64,000 bases of DNA, from contig NW_002060946.1 of assembly GCF_000150275.1 (NCBI RefSeq), positions 2,003,454 to 2,067,453 of the forward strand, read 5' to 3'. The notes under the pieces were generated by a model. That model ran no database searches and was not told the origin of the DNA. It was given only the letters and a program-made list of their open reading frames with translations. Source of the DNA: Trichoplax adhaerens. Taxonomy: Eukaryota; Animalia; Placozoa. Below, piece after piece: positions 40,817 to 61,121 of the stretch; positions within the stretch are counted from its first letter, which is position 1; each line of letters opens with the position of its first letter. A program made the translations under genes and the position numbers.

Positions 40817-43800
40817 ATGAAAATCTTGCTAATAATTTGCATTGCTAGCTGCTGTATCTTCTCTAGCAGTGCTAACGTTAATTATCAGTACTATTCTGAG
40901 CAATGCCAATTATCCATTCCAAGTCATCTATACAAGAATTTTCAAGCTATAACAACGCATTCTTCAACGAAAGTGATGTACCTTGATGTAGTTAATGCAT
41001 CTAACCAACCTCTATACCCTCCAGACGAAAATGTTAAATTAGCATGGATCAAGCTTGATTTTGGCCAAAGCTTAATGATTCTACCTGTCGATTTTACAGT
41101 TATGTCAGCTTTTCTGCCTTATTTTTTCTTTAATAGAATGACATTGGTTATGGCTGAAAAACCGAACAATTGTTTCTCCGATTTACCTGATGAAGTTCGT
41201 GATACACTTGTCTTTACGGCATTGAGGAAATTTGCTCATATTAATTTAAATTGTATCGGTAGCAACTGCGAAACTATATGCAAACGAATTATTGATCCTT
41301 CGACACCACTTGACGATATTACATTCTCATGTTGCCGGATGGTTAACTTTACCGAAGTCTGTCGAATCCCTTACAAGACTTCATCATCAATCATAGCCTT
41401 CCGTTACGTCTCTATCGTCTTAAGTATAATGTTGTCAGCTGCTTTGATCAAATGGTTACTTCGAGATGTACCAGAAATTGAAGCGTAAGCCTATTTTAAA
41501 CTATCTAGCTATAATTGCTTCTCTATATTCATACTTAGCTAATGTAAGAAAGGAAATATTATACCATATTGTACTTTAGCATGCATGTAAAAATAACGCA
41601 AAAGCTATATTAAAAAGCGTTGTATAAAACATACTTTGTCGACTAAGGGCAGTAGTTGTAAGTACTACAAGTAAAAAAGGCAAAGGCTGCAATAAGCGAG
41701 TTAGCAACAGCTATAGACGCAAAATAGTGAATAATTTAAAAATCTATCAGTGAATAGATTCAAACGATTAATCACCCAAATTAGTCGTGAGTACCTTACA
41801 TAAACAAAGTTGTAGATTTTTAGAGTATTTTAATGAGATTTTAGGCTTTCAATTTTCTATCCTCTATTCCATATAAATAGCCAGATACAATGAATAAATT
41901 GATAAGACACCGATTCTATTTCGATCTACTTAAAGCACTGTAAAGTCGATGAAATCATCACCATTCACTATAAATGTGTCAGTTACTATGTTCATACTCA
42001 AATAGTAAACCTACTGCTATTGGCTAATAGATTATAGAGGTTTGCAGAATAAATTGAGAAGACATATGGGTAGCGTACATTTACTTATCTACTTACAAAT
42101 CTATATAACTATACAACCCATAGTAGAAATTAAGTTAAAATGTTAAAGTTAAACTTCTAGCAAGACAACAGTATCTCACTAAGATAGTGATGGAAAGCAA
42201 CTATATTTACAAAATATAGGATATCGATAAATATACTCGGCTAACGAAAATTACCGCATACATAAGACTGTTATTCTGGCCTAGTGCTATTACAGCTAAA
42301 AAATTCTTATGTTTTTAATCCGCTGTTTATAGGACTCATCAAATTGAAACACCAAAAGGGTACGATTATATTGATGTGCGACTTGTATCCAATTATAAAT
42401 CTGAAGATTCTGGTGAAGGCTTTAAACGGTTGTTACATGGATCAGTAATTTCTTCAACTTTATGGCTACGATGTCTGGATCTGTTTGTTCTAGTTATAGT
42501 CGGTTGTGGAATATCAGTTTGGGTACAGACTTTCCCATACTTTTTAGTGCCCTACCCTACCATATATGATACACCTTTCCCCTGGCCTATTGTTCTATCA
42601 TTTCTTACTTTCGCTGGTGTTTATGCTTTATTGACAATTATTATTATTTTGCCGATATTCCACTGCGGTAAAAAAGAATTTGAAAATTCTCTTCGGTACA
42701 AGAATCAAAGTGTCATTAAATATTCAGAAAAAGAGTATGCTTTTCGATTATTATGGTATATGGATAAATTATTTAGTTACATAGCCCATTTGGTAACTGG
42801 AAATATTTTTGATCTTCATCTATGGTGGAAAATAGTTTCCACGCTTATTATAGCCATTCTATGTAGCCCCTTTGCTCTTATTGACAAACTATCGCTACAA
42901 TATTATGCCTTTCGAAAAGCTGATATTTTTACTTGTATACTATGTGATCGATTTCATTGTAGCGGATATAAACTAAGTCATCCTAAGGCGCTATTAAAGG
43001 CAATTATATATATTATATCCGTTGGATATTGTGTCATTTCTGTGATTGGAATATGGGCTTCCATACAAGTTTTCGTTCGAATTTTAATTACATCAACTGC
43101 ATTTATAATGTCGCATAGTAATTTTTTCTCATCTTACTTAGCCATCGGTTTCCCCTTTATTTATTTTATCAAGCAAGTATTTGAGTCCTATTCCGCAGAA
43201 AAAATGACTCTATCTCAAATTATATTTGAAGTGCGAGAAGATGTAGAAAATGAAATCGACGAGTTTTTATCCAGTGACGAAGGAAAATTTGATATCCGCT
43301 TTATTGTTAGCGATAAAGGAGTTCAAGTCGATCTACCAGTAAGGCTAGAAAATTTACGAGATTTCATTACTCAAAAAATGGAATTGTTAACCTACGAATA
43401 TGATACCGATTTACGCTTTGAAGAACAAACTATCATTGTTATATATAAGCTATCTAAAGCCGATGATGAAGGTCATAAAAATTACGATATTGTATTCTCT
43501 CGATTTAATAGTTATTTACATGATTTACGTTTAAAAATTAATGAAGAATTAAGCCAACAGAATAAGGCAGAATTACAAGAACAACTGATTCAAGTTTATT
43601 ACGATATTAAAGATGAGTTTACTAATGAAGGTGATGTCGGTGTACCCATGGAAATTTATAATTATATTGCCTATCAGGCACCCAAGATATCGACTAGTTC
43701 GTGGCAAATGTTTGGCCGAATTCTGACCATTGCTTTAATTGGTGTATGCTTTGTTTTGGCTGTGGCTTCTTTCTATAATATCGATCGAATTAATGCATTA

Positions 43801-44052
43801 AGTGATGCTTTATCGGGCACTATATTATCTTATATAACGATGGTTGCTAGTATGAGTTATGTCGCTAGTGGTGGTATTGAAGAGCATAAGAGACGCATGT
43901 TAGTTAAAAAGCATATCCTTGATTACATTTGTGGTTATCGATTTTTCTACACTCGAGGCAATACTTTTAATCCTTGTACACAGTTATATCAATCATCGCA
44001 TTGGTATAAATTATTGAAGAAATCCAAAGAGTCCTCATCCGATGTCGCATAG
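40817..44052 (+). CDS. Unrecognised multi-pass membrane protein A, 795 aa, 2 exons (40817-41484, 42333-44052): signal peptide, Cys-rich ectodomain, about 8 hydrophobic segments
   Basis: The 223-aa and 558-aa ORFs join in frame through a phase-2 GT-AG intron (EIEA|THQIETPKGYDYIDVRL). The protein is paralogous to the 47240-49892 gene along its length. Confidence 0.88.
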
Positions 44053-44999
44053 AAATGGTTTAATATTTTCTAAGTGTTATGGATAACTTCATTTCTTATT
44101 ACAAATCAATCTTAGGGGTTAGAAATGTCATAAACAGTCAGTTTATAATAAGTAAAGGCTTCCAAGCTAATTCATTACATTCTTTGACCATAATAAAGGT
44201 GTGTAAGAGTTAGAATTATTACTCGATATTTAATCGTGTCGCTAATAGTTTTCTTAACGAAACTGCCCAATTAAATATGTTATCATATCCTATTCTCAGG
44301 ATATATCGTAACAATAATAGCTGAATACATATTATACTCTCCTGTGTGTAGATTACTACTTGATCTCAGCTCTATTGCAAGAAGCTTAACTATCTATCCA
44401 ATCTTGCCTTCGTAACTTATATACTCAATATTTATAAGAAATAAATGTTGAACTTATTCTTATAAGGAAGAAAGACAGGAACGACAAAGAATTTATCATT
44501 GAGCTTCATGAATATAAAGTAGCCAATGGATCTATTTACTGCTCTCAATAGGTTATTTTTTGTTAAGATAAAGTATAAAGAGACCACTTTATCATATTCA
44601 TTATGCCTATCTATGTTAGATGATAGTTAACTTATTCGTTTCTATTTTAATCTTTGATTATAAGCTAACACTTAATGGTCGTATCAAACATGGGGATTAG
44701 TTCTGTGTCGTAATGTTTCTTTTGTCACTAATTTATGATATACTAAGTTTTCCTTTGCTCAAAGTATATCAAAAGATAACTAATTTATTTAATGTACTTC
44801 TTTATTAAGACTTTATTATTGTAAAAATGTCGCCAGTGCGTAGTCTATGAACATTAATCAGTCACTCTTAGTTCTAACTTATTAACTTAATTGCTATTCT
44901 TTGGCCTGTGAGTGAGCTTTGGATCTTTCTTTGCAAATTAGTAATCATTTTACCTTTAATATTATTGTTGGACGGTTGCTATTGGCTTATGGTAACACA

Positions 45000-45265
45000 T
45001 TCATGGATGATAGCGAATATCTCCTAGTTTAATTTTTAGACCTACATTGGAACTATCATGATCATCGGAAGACCGAAGTGTGAGAGTCTCCATATTGGAT
45101 TATGAATCATGCGATAGTAGCTTGTACTAACGCAATCATGGATAATGACAAACATCTCCTGACTTATATTTAGACCTATACTGGGAACTCTCATGATCAT
45201 TGGAAAGCCTAAGTGAAAGAATCGCCATATTGAATTATAAAACATGCGATCATTAGCTGTTGAGT
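45000..45265. repeat. Two-copy ~135-bp direct repeat
   Basis: 'catggat.at..c.aa.atctcct...tttagaccta...ggaact.tcatgatcat.ggaa' at ~45002 and ~45137. Confidence 0.75.
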
Positions 45266-47239
45266 CTCTTCTTCGCCTAGACATTTATTGTGTAATTAAT
45301 TAAAACTAGGTAACCAAAATTCTATTGCCAATTTTGAATCCAAAGTGGTTCGTATCATGATTACATTTTCCCCAGAGCACCATAAGTCTCATGATGATCA
45401 CTCTGAATATTGGTGATTTTAACAAGCAATCTATATTGCGGAATTCGATAAGGTCCTAATTTTGGCTATTAACTTTAATAGGTGTTTAGCTAAGCGTCCA
45501 ATAAAAAAATTTACTTTTACGTTTGCATGATATCTATAAGCAGGTCTAATTGCTAAACTATAAACAAAAGCAGAATCTTTACGTTGTGTCGAGTAAATAG
45601 TCAATAATAAAGAAATTAAACTGCATCAAGACTTGTAATCTTTAGGTAAAGTCGATTAATATATCTAATTTATTTGCCAAAATTGGTTAAAATTCTGCAT
45701 TTTATTTGCCTACATGCAAATTTTATTGTTGAAGTTCACAAAACTTTGATCCTCTTTTATAATAGAACATAGTTTTTGATGTAAAATGTCTCTCTAGGTT
45801 GAAGAGTCGGTAGCAAGTTTTCATTCTGGTGAATACAACGTTATTAATATCAATTATATTATCATTGCAAACTGATGAAGTCTAACTAGCCCATTATTGA
45901 AACATATACATATGCTAACTTATAATAAAGCTTGAATGCGGTATTGGGTATTGACTCATAGTAAGTAATAGTTAAATTCAGAAAACAGTTCGATGACCGG
46001 TATTGCACATCATACCAGAACATATCGCATAAATAATAGCAGATGAGCAACCAAGGACTAGAGAAAATATATAGCGGGGTCAAAGATATTATATTCATGC
46101 GTTATTAGAATAGTAGAGAGCTATTAGTGGGTAATTCAGAAACGATAGCTATAGCCCTAGTTAGATCGCAATCATTTGTGAAATTACATAAGGGTTAGGA
46201 TTAGCGTAAGATAAATATATTACCAAATGACAATCCGTGTACTAATTATGAACTGTGAGATTATATTATCGTTGTAACCGGTACATTATTATCTGTAATA
46301 TCGTGTGAGATATTGATACGTATTATATAGTATGTTAAATTATCAAACCGAACTTCTTTATATACAGTATAATTTATGCATAGCTGGGTATGCAGGTTCT
46401 GCTAGTATCTTATCAAATTCAATTCTATTCTTAATGTTATTCGTTTATATGCTAGTAAATCTTGTTCAATTTTTAGAATTAGTATAGCGTTTAAGGAGAT
46501 TACGATCGAAAATAGTTAGATACTACTAAGTCGTGATAGGTTTATAATACTGTGTTAACAGGAATATTTATTTAATATTTAGCTAAAATATACGGATAAT
46601 TCAATACAAGGTTAGATTTAGGGTAGATTAAAATTTACATATGCGATAGATTTATAACGGAATATTACAGTTTTTTCTTATTGCAAAGAAAAAATATCAA
46701 ATGCTTAATTTAGTTATTCATCGAGCTAAATAAGTTAATTTAGAATCCTAGTGTCTAACTCATACTCCAAAGTGGTAAGGTATAAATAATATTTATATAG
46801 CCATATTACTATTTTATAGGACGATAATTTATCATTTAGTTTATGATAATAACACAATTAATAGCAGTTCCAATTATAGTGTAGTACGGTTAATAAGAAT
46901 ATTAGGTATAGCGTATACGCGGTATATAGGCATATCATTGCTTTCATATTATACCATAACATATTAAGAAGGAAAAAATTTAGCCTCTATTTCTTTGCAA
47001 AGGTATACAGGCATTTCTAATATGTCACAAGTAATCAAACAGAATATAAGAATAAATGCTAATACTTGTGTATGTTGTAAACTAATTTTAACAAATTTGA
47101 AATTGCGGATTACGCATACAAAGAAATACGTACAGTTCCATCACCGATATGAATCTTATTAACTATAATAAGTTATTAGAGATGAAGTTTCCATAGACTT
47201 CTACTAGAAGAGGTCTTAGTTTATATCACATAATCCATT

Positions 47240-49892
47240 TTATACTTCTGTATGATTGCTTTGCATTGACATAGTTGTAATTGGGAAGAGAAATTTCTCA
47301 TCATTTAGATTATCATTGAGGCCTAGTTTTTTTGCCACGACAGTCAATCGGCGATTCTTTCTGGAAGTACTGTTAGCTCGAAGACGAATATCTTGATCAT
47401 CGGATGAACATATAATTTCAGACAATTGAGCGCAATGATTATAGCTTATTCCTCTTGAATAGAAGAATGTATAACCTTTCATATACTTTATGGCATAGTT
47501 TTTAATGGCTTCTTGTCGTTTTTCTGATTTAACATCTTCAGCAATATATTTTAAGCCCAAAAACATGGTAGCATAAGTTAGGACAAAGACAGATACCGCA
47601 TCGCCTAGTGAATTCAATCTTTCTAAGCTGTTAAAAGAAGCAGCAGCTAAATAAAATATAGCTCCAACTACCGTTATAATGGTTATCCTTAATACTAATT
47701 GCCATGGGCTAGTAGATAATTTAGGCAAATGATAGGATAAATACTTGTAGAGATCCATAGGTATAGCAATTTGAAGTTTTCTGGTTTGGATATCGTGATC
47801 TTCGTAATAGATTGGAATCAATGAATTCTGACGCGCTTCTTCTGATAGCAATATCTCTACAATTTGATCGTTTAACTTGGACAAAAAGAAAGAATATTCG
47901 GAAAATACAATTTTGTTTTGTTGATAGTTTTTTATATTATAATACAGAATAACTTGAGTTTCTTCACTTTTTAATTCACATGTATATAAGGAGACTAATT
48001 GCTTAAAAATGTCTTCAAATTCTCCCCTTAACGGTAATAAAATTTTAGGTAAATCAAGTTCCATCGATAAATCTTCATTAATATGTAAGTAAATAGCTAG
48101 TTTGCCGTATAATTTAGTTTGAAATTTTTGACCTTCTGCTTCGACTTGTTCTCTTACTTTTAAAATATCTGTTATTATGGACAACTTCTCTTCAGCATAG
48201 CTGTTCAATACTTGTGTTAAAAAATAAATAAACGGCATAAAGATGCCAATATAAGAGGTAAAATAAGTACCATTAGCCATAACAAATGCTGCCGATGTAA
48301 TTATCATACGCACAATAACTTGATAAGTTATCCATAGAAAGACAACACTGCAAGCATAAAAGATTAAGGTAGCAATATAAATCGTCGGTCGAAAAATGGT
48401 TTCCCGAAAGCTAGGATTAGCGTAACCTTTACTGCATAATCTGGTAGCGATAATTTCTGATTTCTTAAAAACGTAATAATAAAGTGACATTTTATTAATT
48501 AAGAAAAATGGTATAGACAGAATAATTTCCAACAACATGGTCAAGGAGAGCCAACAGCTGCGGCCAAAATATCGACAAGCAAATAATTGACGAAAATGAA
48601 ACCACCATCGAGCAATATATTTTATAAAACGGCGATTTAACTGCGATTCACTGTAGATAAAGATTGCTTCGACTTTATTGATAAATAATCGTTCATATTC
48701 TTCATTACCATAGCGAAAAATGATAGCAATCACGATATATAATGTTGCAGACCCATAAATTGCAGCAATAGCGCAAAAGATATAAAACGTTTGCGATGGT
48801 AAAATGATAGATCCGCGTAAATTAGGATAAATTAAGAAATAGTTAGCATGTAATTGGAACCATACTGAAACTGCTAATCCTGTCATGCTAACTAAGAAAA
48901 CACCAATCATACGTAACCAAATTCTCTTGGTTATAAAATATTCCAGTAGGAAACGTTTAAATCGATAGCCGATACTTTCAGAGCGATAATCAGTAATGAT
49001 TCGGAGATCCATTGCGGTTGATTCTCCGCCTGTATCGTTTTTCCTAAAATAAAATAAAACAGTATAAAATAGTTTATTTCTTCATTATCAAATGCATGAT
49101 CAAAGGATTTTCTGCGTTACCGTTTCTTTAAGTTAACTATTATTTTGATTTTACAGTACTGTTTTTTTAATATATAAGTTACTTCTTAAAATAGAGTAGT
49201 AAAACATCGAACCTTAACGCCGGGGTAGCTTTTAGTGTCCATTTGACAAGGCTTGCGCCTAAAGCACAGCTAACGAGGAGTGATATATAACGAAATGCAA
49301 TGATATAAGTGGATGCTTTATCCGTTGTTGAACATTTTGTCTCATTAGAAATTTTCCAGCAGCATTGTAAATTAATTTTATCAAGACTACTAGCAAGATC
49401 GTATTGACGAGAGCAGACAACATTGCATTTTTCGTCATTAGGACAGGAACGGCCATTATTTGGTAAATCAATTATATAATTTCGAAATAACAGGCGTTTA
49501 CATTGATCATTTAGTAATGACATGCAACGATTTGGTTTTTCAACGGGATAAACACGAATATAATCTTGAAAAACTGCCGGCAAGTATAGATTGATCAAGT
49601 GAAAATCAGCTGGTAACGACAACAAGATTTCACCAAAATTAGGACGACTCCAAGCATAAGTCGTTTTACTATCGGAGTAACTTTCGTTAACTTGAAAATA
49701 AATTACACGAGCGATATTCTGATCTATCTTCGTTTTTAATACTTGATAATCTGATTGTCGAACAGATAGTGAACATTGATGAGTACAAGGGTTTCTTCCT
49801 GTGATAGCATGGCCATAATGGCCCCTCAGGATAACGGCAAGCGACAGATATAAAATCAAAGTAGCGTGATTGATCTTTGTTAACTTGGCCAT
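47240..49892 (-). CDS. Unrecognised multi-pass membrane protein B, 827 aa, 2 exons (49892-49213, 49043-47240), paralogue of protein A
   Basis: A phase-2 intron sits at the same relative position as in A (TPALR|KNDTGGESTAMDLRI). Shared motifs include AWxxxxFGxxLxxLPxDF, EKPNxC, IIAFRY(V/I)S, PM(E/D)xYxY and GYxFFY(T/S)RG. Confidence 0.88.
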
Positions 49893-49949
49893 GACAAAAC
49901 CGTTAATTTTACAATTAGATGATTCAATGACGATCTCCTTCGAGAATTA

Positions 49950-50685
49950 AAGTATTTTTCTTGTTCCTTTCGATTTAAGAAGCCAGAGCCAATAAGAATT
50001 CGATTGATTTTATGCTCAAAGCGACGTTTATGTAGTCAAGTTGAACTCGACACGAATATTAACAACCTGCTGTAGAAGGAATAAGCGAATTAATTAACAT
50101 TATTTACTAAGTCTATACATCATATCATGATGTAAAGATTACTAGAATACAGAAAAAATCTTGCTGAGCTGTAAAAAGGAATGATTTCATGCTCTACTTA
50201 CTCTAGTAATGGTGGAAATTTATCACGGAGAGAAGAAGATGCATAAGTTCAATGCTCCGGATTTCAACATAAAACGCAGTTGTAGATGGGATAAAATATC
50301 TTAATTGTAAGGTTATTTCGAATATTTTTCTTGATCCTTTCGATTTATGAAGCCAAGTCCAATCGAAATTGGATGAATTTTATGCTCAAAGTGACGCTGA
50401 TATAGTCAAGTTAAATTCCACATCAAAATTAACAACCTGCTGTTAAAGGAATAAGCGATTAGTAAACATTTTACTACGTCTAGACTTGATGTCATGATGT
50501 AAAAATTGCTAGAACACAAAAAAATCATGCTGGGTTACGAAAAAGGAATAATTTCATACTCTACTTACCGTAGTAGTCGTGAAAATTTTATCACGGAGAA
50601 AGAACATTCAATGTTCTGGATCTTAATATAAAGGTAGTTGTCGATGGGATAAAATGTGTTAATTGTAAAGATATGTCAATTAATC
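49950..50685. repeat. Tandem duplication (~370-bp unit, 2 copies) of the 5' flank of membrane gene B
   Basis: 'atttttcttg.tcctttcgattta.gaagcca' at ~49954 and ~50324; 'ctctacttac' (minus-strand gtaagt donor) at ~50192 and ~50559. Confidence 0.85.
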
Positions 50686-52847
50686 ACTTTTAGACCGGAA
50701 ACTGAACACAGAATTAGTCTGTTCCTCGTGTAATGGCGTTTTTATAATGTCCGGGTTATTCTATTCTACCCCTCCCATACTACAACAGAAGAACAAAACA
50801 AATCATACTAAAAAAATGTTTTAATGTAAATAATGAGTCAACTACATTCCATCTATCCAATTATTAGCTAAAAGATAATGCTATATATATGAAAGACAAT
50901 GAAAATATATTAGCATCCAGACTTTAATTGTAGTAGAGAGAAAACAGTTCAATAAAATATAGCTTTGATACAATATTATAATCACTTAATAGAGGCAGTT
51001 AAAGGTAATGGAACATCATTACTATTAATGCAGAAAAAAAGTTTCGTTATAGATTTGCGAGTTATTGGCACTCTTTACATATAGAAATTGCGCTAAGCTG
51101 CTACTGCTATGGTAAAGGGACGATGGCGAAGGAGAAGGCGCTAATAAGATCAAAGTATGCAGTTCTCCAGCTAAAATTTTGTATTCTTTCTTTAAATGCA
51201 TTCTGTAGTAATTTTTTTACGTAATTTGAGCTCATTTATTAATGCCATTGACCTTTAGACCAACCTACTGGATAGATACAGTATTTCAGAATAGACTATT
51301 AAGAATACGATGTACAGTTTAGCATCGATCTGCGATAGTTCTTTCGACTTTTATGCATAAATTCACTGTAAACTCTTGTAGTTGATTCAGATTTATAATC
51401 CAAAAATTGAGGCAAGTTGTATTATAATAGATTTCTGTAATTATTTGCGATCTATACATACGATAATTAATTGAGGTAATCTACCATAGTAATGGCCAAG
51501 ATTGCGATACGATAATAAAAACAGTGATAGCTAATTAGTTACTGTTACTAAGGACAAAATATATTATTTTATTTCCAGAATTTGTTATGGCTTCATTTTT
51601 TTGTTTATTCTGGGTATAATTGGACATAATCCGCTAGTCTAAAGCTAAAAGCGTAATACAATTACATGATTTACGAGTTGACAAAGGGTCTGACTATAGT
51701 TCTATCAAGAATACAGAAGATTACATGACGACAATCTTGGTAGTTAATTTCTTAAACAGTCTGATTTTGATTTACTAATATTGTGCAGAAAATGAGAATC
51801 AATCCCAAGATACTGTATAAGTACTCGTATATCAGGAGATGGTATTAAGAATATAAAGTACAGTTTAATACTTATCTGTTTACAGTTATTGTGACTAATT
51901 TATGTATAAACTTGATCGACTTATCAATTTAAGAGCAAAGAATAGTTTATTAAGTGATAAAAAGACCGTTTCATTGTGAATTTTTATTGTTACTTAAGAT
52001 TTCTACGTATAAAAATGGAGAGGAGCTAGGCTGTATTTTATGATAGATTCTTATGATTATTTACAATCTTTAGATAAAGATAAATTGAGCTAATCTACGA
52101 GTTCAGTGACATAAATATGTTATTATAAAAGCGATAATTGTTCATGAGAAGCGTCATTAAAATAAAAGAGACTGTTTAGGCATAGATATTTTTTATAATT
52201 TGATTCTTCCGCTCTTCTCGCGCTTAAAGTTGAGTTAATTGGACAGTGTATGGTAAGAATAGAAGGGATAAATAAGATAAAATTAACGAAGAACTCGGTT
52301 GGAGTTCTATTAAGAATGAAGAGCTCCACCGCGTGATGTCGATTTTTTTGGTATTTTCTCGTGTAAATGATGTTGGGTTACTTACTCTATATTAAACATT
52401 TTAATTAATCGAATACTTAATATAGATACAGAAAACACTATTAAAGATGAAAATTGCGATTTCATATTAATCTTTTAAAATCTATCTTACTCTTTTCTGT
52501 GTCGATGAAGTCGATGTGTAATGAGCAAAACGATTTTAGATATTGAATACGTACTTAATGAAACAAGGCAAAGCATATTATTGTAAGAGTACTTCTTCCC
52601 GCTAATGAAATCATACGTATTGTAAATATAGATTTTCATATACTGTATTGCTGGTAATTATCTGATAAACAGATTTTATTACCATTTCCGTCAATCCCTG
52701 CAAATAAAAAAAATGACCTTCTAGAGGGTAACGCAGTATGGTCGGAGTTAACTCATTGATGAGAAAACATTATCATTCAAGAACTGCTTCTGTATTCAAC
52801 GGTGTCATTCCATCAATCAGTATTTATGTTATAGATTACAAGACTCT

Positions 52848-53450
52848 ACTAGTTATTCCCCGGATATTTGATTTTTAATCACATGATATCCGCTTGTAGC
52901 TATTTCTATATTGGCAAAGGCATAAAGTATACATTAACTTTTAATGAACTGTATATAACATTCAAAAGTAACCAAGTTTTGCAATCTAGATATGAGTAGA
53001 GATACGGAGTGCATAAGTTATACAAATAGCTACAACGGCTTGGTGACATCTTTAAAAGTATATATCCAATTTTATAACGCGAAAAGTTATTCTCATTTAC
53101 GGCTTACGCGTATTATATATCATTAAGATATAATTTTTAGACTGATCATTTCAAAGTAAATTTATTTGCTATTATTCATTATCTATCATCTATGTATTAA
53201 AATGAAGCTATCGCTATAGCTACAATAATAATATGTTCTCGTTTCGAAAAGTTTACTGGTTATTCCCTTTATATTCGATTTTAATCGTATAATATCCGGT
53301 TGTAGCTATTTCTGTATTAAATTTCAAAAACCACCAATGACTCCAAGTTTTGCAAACTGTATGGGAGTAGATATACGGGCTGTATGAAATATATAAATCG
53401 CTACAACGGCTCGGTGATATCTTAAAGTATATATCCAATTCTCTAATGCG
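52848..53450. repeat. Two-copy degenerate direct repeat (~200-240 bp) upstream of the pseudogene C exon
   Basis: 'aagttttgcaa...gagtaga.atacgg...gctacaacggct.ggtga.atctt' at ~52973 and ~53345; 'gttattccc...ttgtagctatttct' at ~52852 and ~53259. Confidence 0.75.
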
Positions 53451-53809
53451 TGCAATGATTTACCGCTTGGTACTTCATAGAATCAATTTTTGAATTACCC
53501 AATTCGATTAATGTTCGTCCTTGCATCGAGTTAATATACGAGTAAATTTCTTTAGCAGCACTTTAGAACTACTGTATTAAACGAAAGTTAAATTTTCAAT
53601 TACTTTACATTACATAATAACTCTGAATCATTCCTGAATTATAATTTTATAAGGTAAATTTTTTACAGCTTCTACATACGAATATCTAATTCTGTTATTG
53701 ATCATAGATAAAATTAGAATTTGATTTAATAGGATTATATTGATTCTTTCCACAAAAAAAACTAAAATATACCTAATCCCAGTATTATTTTTTTCGCCAA
53801 AATCTGTAG

Positions 53810-55289
53810 GATAGAACGTGTCATACGGGGTCTACGGATAACACTCAAGAGCTCACTGTACGAATTATATCTGAGGATGATCGACAAAATGTTAGTAAAC
53901 ACTGTAAAAGATATTATAACGGTATAGCTTCCAAGTTCAAATCATAGCAAGTGCACATCTTTATCTGTATACTGTCAACGGCTGGCATAATTTTATCTGT
54001 ATGGATACAATCAAAACCTTATGCCACGATGCCATATCTTTATGATTTTGCTTAACCTGAAATTTTTGAGATCGTGACAACTATTTTAATTATAAAATAC
54101 ATCCTAGCCGTTATAATAGTAAAGCCAAATTTTTATGGTGATTTAGATATACAAAAGATCGATTTTGAGTATGATCAGATCATAAAAAGCATCGGAAAAA
54201 GAGTTTGTTTTCCATATATTTTGGCATATCAAAAATTTAAAATAGAATTTTCTTCAGATATTGGTACACGGTAGATACAGTCTTGAAATGATCTTTAAAA
54301 CCTGCGCACTTTTATTAATAAATCATAATTGCATCGCCGTTTATTATTATCAATAGATTATCTTTAGTTTATTATATATTCCGTAAAGCGGACATCATTA
54401 CATTTAGATTAAGCTATGCATGTAATTGTCGAGGCGATCATCTAACCTGCTGGAAAGTAATCTTGAAAGTTATTATATATATATTATATCGGTATTACAC
54501 TGTACCATAATAATCGGAGGAATTTGGGTACTTTTACAACTCTTTGCTAAAGTATTTATTATATCGGTTGCTTTTATTGCAACCCACAGTGACTTCTTTG
54601 CTTCTCATTTAGGAGCATTTTTATCACTAATTTATTGTATGCGACGATTATTAAAACTCATTTATTAAAGAGAAGGACATGCTCTATGAAGATATACTAA
54701 ATATGAGGCAAGAGATGGAACACGAAGCCACGGATTATTTTTCATCAGATAATGGAGAATTGGAAATACGATTTGCCCTAACGTATCAAGGTGTTAGACT
54801 AGATTTGCCTGAAAGATTTTTTAATTTACGGGAGGCGATAAAGCAAAATCTTGAAAGGATAGCTTTAAATGATGCAGATGTAATCGAATTTGAAGGACAG
54901 ACTATGAATATCATTTTCAAGCTTATTAGTAGAGAACAGGAAGGAAAAAAGTCGTATAAGGTTACATTTTCTCGATTCGATCATCAGTGGATCATCTACG
55001 CGATATTATCAATAAAGAGTTATCTCGTCAGCAAGAAGAATTTTTACAGTCATCAATCAAACAATTTTATTTTGATATTCCTATGGAAAATTGCAACGAA
55101 ATGGATATTGCTATACCTAACATTCTGCGATATATTCATAGATATACATTTTTTTACACGAAAGGAAGAACCGTCAATCCATTTGCTCAGTTGATTCAAA
55201 TTTCCTCTGGTAGAACACTATCACATGAAACTAAATGTAATCAAGAGCTTTATTTCTCACAGGTCAGTAATAATTTATCGTATTCATAA
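53810..55289 (+). pseudogene. Pseudogene C of the A/B membrane protein family (exon-2 remnant with stops, frameshifts and deletion of the two C-terminal TM segments)
   Basis: After a tgtag acceptor: ELTVRIISE...KS*...AGIILSVWIQSKPY (compare A: DVRLVSNY...GISVWVQTFPY). The fragment ORFs read GIWVLLQLFAKVFIISVAFIATHSDFFASHL, YFSSDNGELEIRF...DLPER and IAIPNILRYIHRYTFFYTKGRTVNP, spread over different frames. Confidence 0.88.
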
Positions 55290-55539: not shown

Positions 55540-57532
55540 ATAGGTAACGATCGAATTTTGTATTAAGAGATGATTAGTTTCTCAGTCTATTAAGACAAAA
55601 ATTAATTTAAATTCTTCGATAACATAATCTGTCGATATTCTTCCAGTCTGACGAACTTATTCATATTTATATTGTCTTTCCATAATAGTTCCGAATGGAC
55701 AATCATGTAAGTGAACGATATCTCGAAGTATACGTAATAACCAATCGACGTCTGTTACAATAATTCCTCCATCGCCTACTTTATCACAAAATAGAATTTC
55801 GCCTAAATCGTGTGAATACGTTAGCATATCTCTTAATTCTTCATCACTTTCGTGTAAACTGTATTTTTCAGCTAATCGTGTAATTTGTTGTATTGTCATT
55901 ATTTTATCGATTTTTATCAGTAATAATTTGATTGATTAACGATGGCCTGATGTTATTGTCCGTTTGACTGTTAGATTAATTAACATCATTATGTGCTGGT
56001 TTATGCAGTATAGTAGCCATAACGTACCATCGTATAGGAATAGGATCACTCATAAACGGTATCGATTCATCAAATTATTTCATAATATCATGTAGTCGTA
56101 GACAGTAAAATATTCCATCTGTGATATACGGAATTTCATCGTATTCGTATCCAATATGTAGCGGAACTGACAAATAATATAGCGATAAATCAAATGGCTC
56201 AACTTCAGGTTCTAATAAATACGGAACGAGATACTGACACGTAACTCTATCACTTCCATCTCGGATACCGCAAACAATATCATAACTCCATTAAATCAAT
56301 TATACTCTTCTTAGTATCAATATCTAAATGAATTTCTTTACAGTTAAGAACATAATCAGTATAGTCTATCGATATTCTTCCAGTTTGACGAACTTGCTCA
56401 TATTTCCCTTGTCTTTCTAAACTTCCAGATTGACAATCATGTAACTGAATAATTGCGCGAAATATACATAATAACCAATTAATGTCTGTTACAATAATTC
56501 CTTCATCACCTACTTTGTCACAGAATACAATTTCACCCAAATCGTGTAAATACGTTAACATATCTCTTAATTCGTATTTTTGAGCTAATTGTCTAATTTG
56601 TTGTATCGTCATTATTTTATCAATTTTATCACTTATAATTTGATTGATTATCGGTGGCTTAGTTTCATTCATACCTTGATCAATATTATCATACTCGTAC
56701 AGTGATTTATGTAATATGGTAGCCATAGCGTATCATCGGATAGGAATAGGTTTATTCATAAATGGTATTGAATCAACGAATTGTTTCATAATATCATGCA
56801 ATACGAGCCGACCACCTGGGGATGGTTATCACCTAGGACTGCCAATCGAATTTGGAGCGATTTAGCAAACATACTCAGAGCCTCATCATGCCTACCATGA
56901 CTATGATAAACATTTCCTATGTAGCTATAGGAATCGGCAACATGGGGATGATTGTGACTTAGGACTGACAGTCGAATTGTCTTTGACTTGTTGTACATAG
57001 CAAGAACCTCTCCATGCTTGCCTTGACTAGCATAAGCATTCGCACGCTGTTATAGGAATCGGCAACATGGAGATGATTGTCACCAAGGACTGACAATCGA
57101 ATTCTGAGTGAATTAAGATGCATAGAAAGAGCCTCATCATATTTGCTGTCATTATAATAGGTAGTTTCCATGTTGCTATACAAGGTAGCAACATCGGGAC
57201 AGCGTTGTTGATAATACAATGTTTAATGTTATGGCAAAATTGTTTAACATCACTTCAAAATCTGGAAAAAGCTTGTAATTAATTATTTGAAAACTATTCA
57301 TAGATAGAGCCAAATCATAGATGCCACCATTATCGTAGATACGCCCTATTTGATCATAGGAGCCGGCAACAATTTTCTCGCTGATATTCTTGCGCTTTGA
57401 TTTCATTTCAAGAGATTTCTTACTGTCTTTGAGGGCTTCATCCAAGTCTTCTTGCGCTATTTTAATCTCAGCTTGCATGTATATAATATAAACATGTCGC
57501 CAATCTGAATCGATCCTGCAGTTGATTAGCAA
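55540..57532 (-). pseudogene. Mosaic Roco-type pseudogene: decayed TPR repeats followed by two tandem COR-domain fragments, no Roc GTPase seen
   Basis: TPR-like text (EALSMHLNSLRIRLSVLGDNHLHVADSYN, SYIGNVYHSHGRHDEALSM) at 56800-57532. COR-like motifs (PIPIR[W/*]Y, ELRDMLTYLHDLGEIVF, IIVTDINWL, YLVPYLL) at 56110-56800 and again at 55540-56100. Many stops and frameshifts. Confidence 0.8.
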
Positions 57533-58358: not shown

Positions 58359-61121
58359 ATGCCTAAAAGTAGTTTGCCCAAAGGTTGGAAGCTATCTGGT
58401 AAACCAGATAATCCTAGGAATATCTACTTGATAACGTAAGCCAAACAATAATCTTCTTGTACTGTAGTTTGTAGTGTACAGTACAGTCAAAGCTGGGATT
58501 CGTCATTTCAAGTTTACTGCATTAGTCAAACGAATGTCCATGATTACAATAAATAAAATAAATTATTGCAAACAATTCTTTTTCATAGCAACCATAATTA
58601 TGATGTACACTTTGGCACAATTTTAAAATACACGTATTAATTATTACTTCTGGCATATTTCTATCCTTAGTTAATAATTAATCGAACTACGTACATGCTT
58701 CCAGTAATGTAAGCGTAAAAACAAAACTATTTGCATAATGATCCACTAATTTGAATTAATACAGACCAGATGGATGTAAAGTTCGCTACCCGAGCGAAAT
58801 ATGGCGTTATGTTGAGAGGAAAAATTTAAATTTAACGCCTTCCGATTTTGCATATTATCAACGGGTTACCGGTAGACAAATGATTTCCGACGATAAAATT
58901 AACAAAATTAAAGATGCAAACAATGGCCAGCAGGCACATTCGGATGAAAATGATGCTCATACCCGTAGAAGCAGTAGCCTTTCTATCGCAAAGGAAAGAT
59001 GTAAAGTTTTCAATGCAAAAAATAATAACGACAAGTTGGAGAGAAACACTACTACATCTTGTGATAGAATACCTACTGTTGTAGAAATGAGCAAAAATTC
59101 TGCAAGACTTCAATCCAAAAATAGGCAAAAGACAAAAACGCTAATGAATGACACGACAGTTAATGAAGAAGTAAATGAGCAAACAGCCATTGCTAGTCGT
59201 ACAAGACGTTCTATAAGAAATGTAAAGGTAGTGAATCATAGTATGACAACACAAATGGTGGAACTTTTAGAGGAAGATAATATGTTTGATGGTAAAGCTG
59301 TTAACCGCAAATCAGCTAAGTTGCTACTACATCCTATCGGCCAATCAAGTCCAGTAATTGCACACAGTAAGATAAATAAGGTACCGGTAAATACGCTTGA
59401 TAAGGTAATCGGAATCAAACAGCGTCTAAGGCAGTCGAAAGTAAACTTGTTAGCAACCAATAATGGATCTGTACGTATTAATAATAAAACTGCCAAACAT
59501 GTAATGATGCCTGTTGATGAAGAAACTAATATCACTGAAAGCAGCAATGCAGCCCCGTCTCAAACACGTCAAGATAGTCTGGGGCTACGAGACAGATCAA
59601 GGCTAGTTAAAACTTTTAAAGCAAAGGTCCTACAAGAAGAACATACAAGAAAGCTTGAAAAACCTGGCGATTTAGATTATAAAACAACATTCAAAACATG
59701 TGCAAATCAATTGTGTAAGATACCAAAAAGCAGCAGTATTAAAAATACGAAGCTTGATAACACTATACAGGTTAAATCTCCAACTATTCAATTGCGTAGA
59801 ATTTCAAATCGCCGGAATATTGCTATAAAGAATGATGATCAAATGGTTACTGTCAAAGCAGAGGTCATAAATAATTGCAAACAGACCGTAAAGTTGGAAA
59901 GGAAAAATATAATGAAGCGCAAATCATCTGTAAGCAGAAATGCAGACGCAAAAAAGATTAAAATAGCGAAGAGAAATAATAACATTACAAAAAATGTACG
60001 AGAAATTGCCTTGACCAATCTTAAGCTAAAACAGAGCAAGAATAAGTCAGCTAAATTAATTGGAAAGGGGAAAGTTAAAAAAATCGGGACTAAAGAGAAA
60101 ATGAAGAAGGATACTAAAGATTCAGATAGTATTCAAAATGAAGAAAATATTGGTAAGATAAGTAGCCTGAAATCACCAAAAAATAGAAGCCGTCAAATGG
60201 TCATTGAATCAGATGAGTTAGCGATTAAATCAAAATCTAGAAATCCTCGTAAAATTATTAATGGCAAACGTGTCCCTCGCCATATTAAAGGACCCAAATG
60301 GATACCTCCCAAATCTCCGTACAATTTAATTCAGGAAAAGTTATTTGATAACCCTTGGAAACTATTGATTTCAACGTTATTGCTGCACAATATAACAGGT
60401 AAGAGTAGCTAGCTTACAAGCTATTACTCTTCAATAGAATCTTTTAACGTTATTGCATTATCTGTAGTCGTAGAAAAAAAAGCTATTCCATTGCTATGGA
60501 AATTTTTTGGGCATTATCCCACTCCAGAAATAGCAAGTAATGCTAATTGGAAGGAAATGGCAGAGAATTTCTCTGCTCTGGACATGCAACATGATCGAGC
60601 CAAAATAATCATTAAATTTTCCGGTAGATTTATGTCGTTAATGCATGATTGGTATATTTTGAGGCCTTCACTAACTTTATTTGCCAAAATGGAAATTTTA
60701 GATGAATATATTAAAAAAGATTGGTGTTATCCATGTGAATTATTTGGTATTGGTAAATATGGAAACGATTCTTACAGAATTTTTTGCGTTAATGAGTGGA
60801 AGAAGGTATTGTAAGCTAATATAATATTTTGACGTAAGAGGTCATATTAATTTAGATTGTCATTTATATTACTTTATAATTGGCCTTATTATTTTCATCT
60901 GATCATAGTTAATATCTTGTATGTTTATCATCCAGGTCTTTCCCAGAGACTACAATCTGGTTAGGTATCATAAATGGCTATGTCAAAAATATAAATACGT
61001 TCCCCGTAAGCGACCTAACGTTACTTTTGATTATACTGTTGGAACTCATGACATAAACCTTAGCGAACTTAAAGATATGTTTAAACCGAGTTTGCCCGTA
61101 GAGTCAATTCCTGATAGCTAA
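58359..61121 (+). CDS. MBD4: Methyl-CpG-binding domain protein 4 (degenerate MBD, long basic linker, HhH mismatch glycosylase), exons 58359-58435, 58765-60398, 60474-60623, 60702-60805, 60936-61121
   Basis: MBD-like region LPKGWK...[33 protein letters not shown]. Glycosylase region [24 protein letters not shown]...[12 protein letters not shown]...[35 protein letters not shown] closely matches the recalled human MBD4 C-terminus. Confidence 0.95.

What the first reader, a model, noticed from the sequence alone, without database searches (positions are those of the whole stretch)
40817..55289. Three-member cluster of an orphan ~800-aa receptor/channel-like membrane protein family
Seen: two intact convergent paralogues (A 795 aa, B 827 aa) and one pseudogene (C). 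A and B share a signal peptide, a ~175-aa Cys-rich ectodomain, about 6 hydrophobic helices, a ~180-aa charged soluble domain, 2 more helices and a YxxGYxFFY(T/S)RG tail. They also share one phase-2 intron just after TM1, so the ectodomain sits on its own exon. I find no rhodopsin DRY/NPxxY, transporter or known channel signature. Inference: an uncharacterised cell-surface sensor or ligand-gated pore family evolving by birth and death, with a modular ectodomain exon. The neighbouring TPR-Roco relic and solo LTR fit a fast-evolving, possibly immune or chemosensory, neighbourhood. I have an unverified recollection of similar unannotated proteins in cnidarians and molluscs.
Basis: partly seen in the sequence, partly recalled or inferred. 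Interest (0 to 1): 0.8.

Follow-up and report, generated by a model that had tools for sequence, protein, structure and literature searches.

The report
Placozoan orphan membrane glycoprotein gene cluster
Two working genes and one dead copy in this Trichoplax window belong to a family of about 25 large multi-pass membrane glycoproteins found only in placozoans; they match no characterised family or solved fold, so they are a good but untested candidate for a lineage-specific surface receptor.

Summary
The window is Trichoplax adhaerens. Gene A (795 aa, + strand) and gene B (827 aa, - strand, TRIADDRAFT_55359) are intact, convergent, two-exon paralogues. They share a phase-2 intron just after the first membrane helix.

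The cluster is not a three-gene family. The genome holds at least 22 two-exon genes in tandem arrays, plus pseudogenes, an ectodomain-only gene and a divergent intronless member. This scan has already reported the same family on other DNA of this genome.

An exhaustive HMMER search of 1.84 billion representative proteins gave 40 hits. Every named hit is Trichoplax, so the recalled cnidarian and mollusc relatives were not found. Pfam-A and PDB sequence searches are blank.

The genes are under purifying selection, and the ectodomain usually evolves fastest. A surface-sensor role is plausible but untested. Pore formation is not supported by any evidence here.

The parts
40817..41484 (+). Gene A exon 1: signal peptide, Cys-rich ectodomain, TM1. 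It ends 2 nt into a codon.
   Evidence: ORF; donor GC|GTAAG at 41485; 29% identical to B exon 1, E 2e-31
41485..42332 (+). Gene A intron, 848 nt, phase 2
   Evidence: GT..AG boundaries and frame count
42333..44052 (+). Gene A exon 2 (stop included): helical membrane core, soluble domain, TM8-9, YICGYRFFYTRG tail
   Evidence: own-genome match without stops
49213..49892 (-). Gene B exon 1 (TRIADDRAFT_55359 residues 1-226 plus 2 nt)
49308..49805 (-). Gene B ectodomain, residues 30-195: 10 Cys, alpha+beta, no PDB neighbour
49044..49212 (-). Gene B intron, 169 nt, phase 2
   Evidence: junction as in P0001
47240..49043 (-). Gene B exon 2 (stop included)
48194..48922 (-). Gene B hydrophobic helix block, residues 268-510. 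Family-wide polar residues S286, Q290, Q468 and R472 lie here.
47708..48193 (-). Gene B acidic alpha/beta soluble domain, residues 511-672, probably cytosolic
47540..47707 (-). Gene B TM8-TM9 hairpin, residues 673-728; the most constrained part between species
   Evidence: 98% identical to the orthologue, dN 0.008
47450..47485 (-). Gene B tail motif YMKGYTFFYSRG, residues 747-758
53786..55289 (+). Copy C: pseudogene relic of exon 2 only, closest to A and its relatives. It has frameshifts (frames 2/3/1/3), at least 5 stops and a deleted TM8-9 region. No exon 1 is detectable.

Best explanation
A and B are real, spliced genes kept by selection. They belong to a placozoan-restricted family with at least 22 intact two-exon genes, several pseudogenes, one ectodomain-only gene and one divergent intronless member.

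Each protein has these parts: a cleaved signal peptide; an N-glycosylated, disulfide-bonded ectodomain of ~165 aa whose predicted fold has no solved neighbour; a first membrane helix; a bundle of further hydrophobic helices carrying a few invariant polar residues (S/Q in one helix, Q/R in another); an acidic alpha/beta domain of ~160 aa, most likely cytosolic; a strongly constrained helical hairpin; and an aromatic membrane-proximal tail.

The most likely working model is a cell-surface (or lumen-facing) receptor family. In it, the variable ectodomain, encoded on its own exon, binds external ligands. The conserved membrane core and cytosolic domain pass the signal inward.

Shown here: gene structure, family size and distribution, selection, glycosylation bias, and absence of known relatives and folds. 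Inferred: location at the plasma membrane, ligand binding, and any signalling. My probabilities are ~0.9 that this is a genuine placozoan-only orphan family and ~0.4 that it acts as a surface sensor.
For: Gene models:
- Phase-2 GT donors sit at the homologous place in 20 of 22 genes.
- The NCBI model P0001 joins the two exons.
- The intronless 898-aa relative carries the ectodomain and the membrane part in one ORF.

Selection:
- The B orthologue in another placozoan read set has omega ~0.1. dN is 0.22 in the ectodomain, 0.14 in the core and 0.008 in TM8-9.

Family size and arrays.

Restricted distribution:
- 40 hits among 1.84 billion representatives; every named one is Trichoplax.
- Nothing in JGI metagenomes.

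Outside-facing ectodomain:
- N-terminal leader and conserved Cys framework.
- Sequons at 2.49 per 100 aa against 1.02 expected. The soluble domain is at expectation (0.67 against 0.64).

Receptor-like evolution:
- The ectodomain has the highest dN in most paralogue pairs; omega reaches 0.9 in e1/e2.
- d1/d2 are a mosaic: ectodomain dS 0.94, soluble domain dS 0.076.
- Recent duplicates and pseudogenes are present.

The soluble domain has no enzyme-like constellation of conserved polar residues.
Against: - There is no direct evidence of location, ligand or signalling.
- Topology is unsettled. AlphaFold draws residues 439-483 as one 45-residue helix. Both loops flanking helix 388-408 are net positive. 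The span count is therefore 7 to 9, and the side on which the soluble domain lies rests on indirect arguments.
- No positive selection was shown. dS is saturated for most pairs.
- One H1/H2 orthologue pair is 822/825 identical with no ectodomain change.
- No expression data could be linked to these genes.
- Only the PDB was available for fold comparison, not AlphaFold DB.
- The membrane core and the soluble domain were not folded and searched on their own.
Confidence: 0.45

Rival explanations
1. The proteins are pore-forming. They would be a ligand-gated or mechanically gated ion channel family, in which the conserved TM hairpin and the polar Q/R residues line a pore formed by an oligomer.
For: - Invariant polar residues lie inside hydrophobic helices: S286/Q290 and Q468/R472.
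- The TM8-9 hairpin is extremely constrained between species.
- A cytosolic domain is inserted between helices, as in several channel families. That comparison is my own knowledge and was not tested here.
Against: - There is no selectivity-filter-like motif.
- The oligomeric state is unknown.
- No acidic residues are conserved in the membrane helices.
Confidence: 0.15
2. The proteins are intracellular or housekeeping-type membrane proteins, for example lipid or sterol handling, cargo sorting or glycoprotein processing in the secretory pathway. On this reading the 'ectodomain' is luminal and they are not surface sensors.
For: - UniRef names one paralogue (TRIADDRAFT_60553) 'SSD domain-containing'.
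- A signal peptide plus a glycosylated domain fits a luminal location as well as an extracellular one.
- One member is intronless, single-copy and conserved (75% identity between placozoans), which looks less like a sensor.
Against: - None of 46 family members, including the one labelled SSD, hits any Pfam sterol-sensing or Patched model at E of 0.1 or less.
- Patched appears only at Foldseek E 2.1 with TM-score 0.07.
- A 20-fold tandem expansion with pseudogenes and fast-diverging ectodomains is unusual for housekeeping machinery.
Confidence: 0.15
3. The family is a very distant, unrecognised branch of a known receptor superfamily. Candidates are class B/adhesion/Frizzled-type GPCRs or GOLD-domain seven-helix proteins. 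The seven helices after the ectodomain would be a 7TM bundle, and the soluble domain plus two helices a later addition.
For: - The N-out topology, with a Cys-rich ectodomain followed by up to seven hydrophobic helices, matches the outline.
- Several GPCRs appear among weak Foldseek rows.
- Placozoans are known for large lineage-specific GPCR expansions (PMC10580291).
Against: - No 7tm Pfam hit was found in 46 members.
- The ectodomain is alpha+beta with no GOLD, Frizzled-CRD or hormone-receptor-domain match.
Confidence: 0.1
4. The proteins are self/non-self (allorecognition) or immune recognition molecules with polymorphic ectodomains.
For: - The genes form a tandem, fast-turnover family beside a decayed TPR/COR (NLR/Roco-like) gene.
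- The ectodomain is the fastest-evolving part in most paralogue pairs.
Against: - The H1 and H2 lineages differ at 3 of 825 residues in one orthologue pair, and none of the three is in the ectodomain.
- Orthologues of A and B are kept one-to-one in a distant placozoan.
- Omega is ~0.1.
Confidence: 0.05

Closest known systems
Pfam PF28478 (DUF8415), a domain of unknown function newer than the local Pfam copy
   Same: The precomputed label sits on the divergent intronless family member (P0047 and P0048; unmarked, so E of 1e-5 or less, on P0048). It sits weakly on the exon-1 product of B's orthologue (P0003), so it most likely covers the Cys-rich ectodomain. hhalign links that member's ectodomain to this family at 98.7% probability.
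   Different: The model could not be run here. P0001 itself carries no label. The taxonomic range of DUF8415 is unknown to me, and it has no function assigned.
Class B / adhesion / Frizzled GPCRs
   Same: Signal peptide, a Cys-rich N-terminal ectodomain, then a block of up to seven hydrophobic helices. These are also lineage-specific expansions in placozoans.
GOLD-domain seven-helix (GOST) proteins such as TMEM87, GPR107/108 and Wntless
   Same: The outline is the same: signal peptide, ~170-aa disulfide-bonded luminal/extracellular domain, multi-helix core. This resemblance comes from my own knowledge.
Sterol-sensing-domain proteins (Patched, NPC1, Dispatched)
   Same: One paralogue bears an automatic UniRef 'SSD domain-containing' name. 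NPC1 also starts with a Cys-rich luminal domain followed by TM1 (my own knowledge).
   Different: No Pfam Patched or sterol-sensing hit in any member. Patched comes only at Foldseek E 2.1 with TM-score 0.07. There is no 12-helix pseudo-repeat.
Tandemly expanded chemoreceptor families (insect GR/OR, nematode SR, vertebrate V2R)
   Same: The mode of evolution is shared: tandem arrays, pseudogenes, recent duplicates and a ligand-facing part that changes fastest.
   Different: There is no sequence or fold relationship. The topology is N-out with a large ectodomain, unlike insect 7TM ion-channel receptors. Function is untested.

Membership tests
Pfam DUF8415 (PF28478) | Significant match to the family HMM | tested here: inconclusive
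   The HMM is absent from the local library. Precomputed labels are strong on P0048, present on P0047, weak on P0003 (B-orthologue exon 1) and absent on P0001. An indirect link comes from hhalign at 98.7% over the ectodomain.
GPCR superfamily (classes A, B, adhesion, Frizzled) | Seven-helix bundle superposable on solved GPCRs, or a 7tm Pfam match | tested here: not met
GOLD-domain seven-helix (GOST) proteins | Beta-sandwich GOLD ectodomain on a 7TM core; Lung_7-TM_R Pfam match | tested here: not met
Sterol-sensing-domain proteins (Patched/NPC1) | Five-helix SSD recognised by the Pfam Patched or Sterol-sensing models, or by fold | tested here: not met
   No such Pfam hit in any member, including P0046, which UniRef calls SSD. 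Patched 6mg8 scores Foldseek E 2.1, TM-score 0.07.
Membrane adenylyl/guanylyl cyclases | Six-helix block followed by a class III cyclase catalytic domain (Pfam PF00211) | tested here: not met
Insect-type 7TM ion-channel chemoreceptors (GR/OR/GRL) | Cytosolic N-terminus, seven helices, 7tm_6/7tm_7 Pfam match | tested here: not met
   An N-terminal leader plus a sequon-enriched, Cys-rich first domain puts the N-terminus outside. No Pfam hit.
Birth-and-death receptor gene family (an evolutionary kind, not a homology family) | Tandem arrays, pseudogenes, recent duplicates, fastest change in the outward-facing domain | tested here: met
   There are 22 two-exon genes in arrays of 2 to 9. Pseudogenes include C, e5 and two fragments on C1411. 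e1/e3 are near identical. Ectodomain dN is highest in most pairs.

The most novel reading that the evidence does not exclude
These genes define a new class of animal surface receptor (or receptor-channel) that arose within Placozoa. It would combine an ectodomain fold and a multi-pass core with no counterpart elsewhere. The family would have expanded to about 25 genes, giving an animal without neurons a private chemosensory or microbe-sensing repertoire alongside its GPCRs.
Probability: 0.3. Interest if true: 0.75.

Novelty: categorically new. Interest (0 to 1): 0.5.

Why it matters
Placozoans coordinate feeding and movement without nerves, and how they sense food, microbes and each other is largely unknown. 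A phylum-specific family of about 25 membrane glycoproteins, maintained by selection and with an unmatched ectodomain fold, is a concrete candidate for part of that sensing. It also illustrates how new receptor architectures arise.

The claim is limited in three ways. The proteins are already in databases as 'uncharacterized'. Orphan families are common in every genome. Function here is only inferred.

Tried and rejected
Family and sequence searches, all blank:
- Pfam-A on all ORFs and on 46 family members found only noise.
- Profile searches of PDB sequences with three alignments found nothing.
- The word-indexed protein search, with B exon 2, the family profile and the intronless member, found only placozoan proteins.
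- A JGI metagenome scan found nothing.

Fold searches, no specific match:
- Foldseek of the full model against the PDB gave no hit at E of 0.001 or less.
- The ectodomain model against PDB representatives, the full PDB and viral models gave nothing.
- The ESM Atlas, for the whole protein and for the soluble domain, gave no usable hit; its own model of the protein is poor.

Literature and other checks:
- A search for the locus tag and for PF28478/DUF8415 returned zero papers.
- The supplements of the placozoan cell atlas hold no TRIADDRAFT identifiers, so expression could not be looked up.
- Rfam and tandem-repeat scans of 40-56 kb were blank.

Readings rejected: GPCR, GOST, SSD, adenylyl cyclase and 7TMIC membership (see the membership tests), a transposon or viral origin (no such domains or viral fold match), and allorecognition-type hypervariability.

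Not done:
- The joined A protein was never built or searched; its two exons were handled separately by reference. For B, the database entry P0001 served as the spliced protein.
Full report
WHAT IS THERE

The window is Trichoplax adhaerens (G000:C1411:2003454-2067453). It is AT-rich, with about 31% GC.

Gene A lies on the + strand.
- Exon 1 is 40817-41484.
- The sequence GC|GTAAG places a donor at 41485, and TTTATAG| places the acceptor at 42331-42332.
- Exon 2 is 42333-44052.
- The two exons add up to 2385 nt, or 795 codons. The intron (848 nt) splits a codon after its second base, so it is phase 2.

Gene B lies on the - strand.
- Exon 1 is 49892-49213, the intron is 49212-49044 (169 nt), and exon 2 is 49043-47240.
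- That is 827 codons, again phase 2.
- It is letter for letter the database protein TRIADDRAFT_55359 (P0001), whose sequence reads ...TPALR|KNDTGG... across the junction.

A and B are paralogues. Exon 2 is 34% identical (E 5e-100) and exon 1 is 29% identical (E 2e-31). They converge on each other.

Copy C is a relic of exon 2 only.
- tblastn pieces run from about 53786 to 55235, in frames 2, 3, 1 and 3, with five to seven stops.
- It shows no trace of an ectodomain exon in the 4 kb upstream.
- It lacks the part that encodes TM8-9.

I did not build or search a joined A protein. A's exons were always handled separately by reference. For B, the database entry P0001 served as the spliced protein.

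PROTEIN ANATOMY

Hydropathy and an AlphaFold2 model of B built on a 46-sequence family alignment (mean pLDDT 80, pTM 0.72) give the following layout:
- an N-terminal hydrophobic leader;
- an alpha+beta domain at residues ~30-195, with 10 Cys in B and 8 in A;
- TM1 at 196-220;
- a positively charged linker;
- hydrophobic helices at 268-291, 310-338, 388-408, 439-483 and 485-508, with two amphipathic helices (341-382) between them;
- an alpha/beta domain at ~511-672, with six strands and four helices;
- helices at 673-698 and 705-727;
- a helical tail carrying Y747xxGYxxFxxxG758.

Family-wide conserved positions are as follows:
- In the ectodomain: the Cys framework plus W81, G87, P94, F108 and R162.
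- Inside the hydrophobic helices: S286 and Q290, then Q468 and R472.
- In the soluble domain: D557-x-P559, Y595, Y639/Y640 and P655.
- In the tail: G750-Y751.

Two points support an outside-facing first domain and a cytosolic soluble domain. Across 22 paralogues the first domain carries N-x-S/T sequons at 2.49 per 100 residues, against 1.02 expected from composition. The soluble domain is at expectation (0.67 against 0.64), is acidic (net -7) and has no conserved Cys.

The number of spans is not settled. AlphaFold draws 439-483 as a single 45-residue helix, and both loops flanking helix 388-408 are net positive. Seven to nine spans are possible.

THE FAMILY IS MUCH LARGER THAN THREE GENES

A six-frame search of the whole genome gives about 30 exon-2 matches and 24-26 ectodomain-exon matches.

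After fetching the clusters I paired them into 22 two-exon genes, always in the order ectodomain exon then core exon on one strand:
- A and B in this window;
- one gene 15 kb past the window's end;
- three genes at C1411 2.177-2.194 Mb (46-49% identical to A);
- five genes plus two fragments at C1411 1.565-1.605 Mb;
- nine genes at C1399 0.369-0.428 Mb;
- two genes at C1397 0.93 Mb.

In 20 of the 22 genes a GT, mostly GTAAG, begins one base before the stop that ends the exon-1 ORF. That is the signature of the same phase-2 intron.

Three further relatives stand apart:
- an ectodomain-only ORF (C1397, 249 aa);
- a distant exon-2-like match on C1413;
- a divergent intronless 898-aa ORF on C1414.

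The intronless ORF has the same ectodomain (hhalign probability 98.7%). By eye it also has the same pre-TM8 and TM8-9 loop motif (IPxxxY..., SFxxLxRLxSL). Because that ORF carries both modules in one reading frame, it independently supports joining the two exons elsewhere.

A maximum-likelihood tree shows three things:
- It puts A with the three 2.18-Mb genes, and B as their well-supported sister lineage.
- A and B each have a one-to-one orthologue in read sets of another placozoan (P0004 and P0002).
- It contains near-identical recent duplicates (e1/e3).

This same family has already been reported by this scan on other DNA of this genome (s1-769869, s1-760860, s1-739349). My results agree with those notes. 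I add the DUF8415 link, the intronless member and the mosaic pair.

RELATIVES ELSEWHERE

The word-indexed search found only B itself and one orthologue.

The orphan claim rests on absence of relatives, so I ran the exhaustive HMMER search of 1.84 billion representatives. It gave 40 hits at E of 0.001 or less.
- All that carry names are Trichoplax adhaerens or Trichoplax sp. H2.
- The unnamed ones come from a few Logan and ENA read sets on short contigs, and they fall inside the family tree as orthologues.

The profile search, the search with the intronless member and a JGI metagenome scan added nothing.

One gap remains. The exhaustive search was run with B, not with the intronless member, which is the likeliest to have distant kin.

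KNOWN FAMILIES AND FOLDS

- Pfam-A finds nothing in any of 46 members.
- PDB sequence profiles find nothing.
- Foldseek of the full model against the PDB has no hit at E of 0.001 or less. The top rows (MukB, adenylyl cyclase 9, GPCRs, TRP channels, Patched) have TM-scores of 0.04-0.10 by query length.
- For that ectodomain model, the best Foldseek E is 0.16 in the PDB and 0.018 in viral models.

On present evidence the ectodomain fold has no solved counterpart. The caveats are a shallow alignment made only of paralogues and the lack of an AlphaFold DB comparison.

The only family label is a precomputed one from a newer Pfam, PF28478 (DUF8415). It is strong on the intronless member's orthologue and weak on the exon-1 product of B's orthologue, so it probably covers the ectodomain. 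I could not run that model and found no paper that mentions it.

The UniRef name 'SSD domain-containing' on one paralogue is not backed by Pfam or by fold.

SELECTION

I compared B with its orthologue (locus L034, with the same two-exon layout) using the Nei-Gojobori method.

Region | dN
--- | ---
Ectodomain | 0.22
Helix block | 0.14
Soluble domain | 0.19
TM1 | 0.06
TM8-9 | 0.008 (98% identity)

dS is saturated (above 1) and omega is about 0.1 throughout.

Among nine paralogue pairs the ectodomain has the highest dN in most. Omega runs from 0.14 to 0.90; the 0.90 is e1/e2.

The pair d1/d2 is a mosaic. Ectodomain dS is 0.94 and soluble-domain dS is 0.076.

One H1/H2 orthologue pair differs at 3 of 825 residues, none of them in the ectodomain. 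This argues against hypervariable, allorecognition-like behaviour.

HOW IT MOST LIKELY WORKS

Shown here: real, constrained genes; an outward- or lumen-facing glycosylated Cys-rich domain; a multi-helix core with a few buried polar residues; an acidic alpha/beta domain without an enzyme-like set of conserved polar residues; and birth-and-death evolution in tandem arrays.

Inferred: the ectodomain binds external ligands, and the core plus the cytosolic domain relay the event inward.

My probabilities are:

Reading | Probability
--- | ---
Sensor | ~0.4
Pore-forming version | ~0.15
Intracellular or housekeeping role | ~0.15
Missed kinship to a known receptor superfamily | ~0.1
Allorecognition | ~0.05

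NEIGHBOURHOOD

ORFs at 55657-57532 (- strand) hit TPR_12 and TPR_10 strongly and COR-A weakly, and they are fragmented. This confirms a decayed TPR/Roco-like gene next to C.

No Rfam family and no tandem repeat was found in the regions searched (Rfam 40-56 kb, tandem repeats 44-54 kb). I did not look for the solo LTR.

VERDICT

The family lies outside every characterised family and solved fold available here, so I rate it categorically new in kind.

Interest is moderate. The proteins are already catalogued as uncharacterised, the scan has met the family before, orphan families are common, and function is untested.

Noticed in passing
G000:C1414:5622031-5624727 (- strand) = L036:1532-4228: A divergent, intronless 898-aa family member. 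It has the same ectodomain (hhalign 98.7%) and a similar TM8-9 loop motif, with a long low-complexity linker after TM1. Its orthologues P0047 and P0048 carry the Pfam label DUF8415. It is the best seed for finding relatives outside Placozoa.
   Followed up: partly
G000:C1397:123632-124381 (- strand) = L037:3132-3881: A 249-aa ORF with signal peptide, ectodomain and TM1 only. No core exon lies within the 3 kb downstream. It may be a single-pass or decoy version of the family, or a remnant.
   Followed up: partly
G000:C1411:2177366-2187048 (paralogues d1 and d2): A mosaic pair. The ectodomain exon is old (dS 0.94) but the part encoding the soluble domain is nearly identical (dS 0.076). This indicates gene conversion or exchange of the ectodomain exon.
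   Followed up: partly
G000:C1399:369039-371886 and 380565-383442 (paralogues e1 and e3): Near-identical copies in inverted orientation, which indicates a very recent duplication inside the nine-gene array.
   Followed up: no
window 55657-57532 (- strand): Fragmented ORFs with strong TPR_12/TPR_10 hits and weak COR-A hits: a decayed TPR/Roco-like gene directly beside pseudogene C.
   Followed up: partly
window 58880-60814 (+ strand): A 510-aa Lys/Asn-rich ORF and a following 107-aa ORF have no Pfam-A hit at E of 0.01 or less. Another first-stage note places an MBD4-like gene here. I did not examine it.
   Followed up: no
window 45042-45284 (- strand): An 80-aa ORF between A and B contains an internal near-repeat (…IWRFFHLGFPMIMRVP… / …IWRLSHFGLPMIMIVP…). 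Tandem Repeats Finder reported nothing here, and it is probably not a gene.
   Followed up: no
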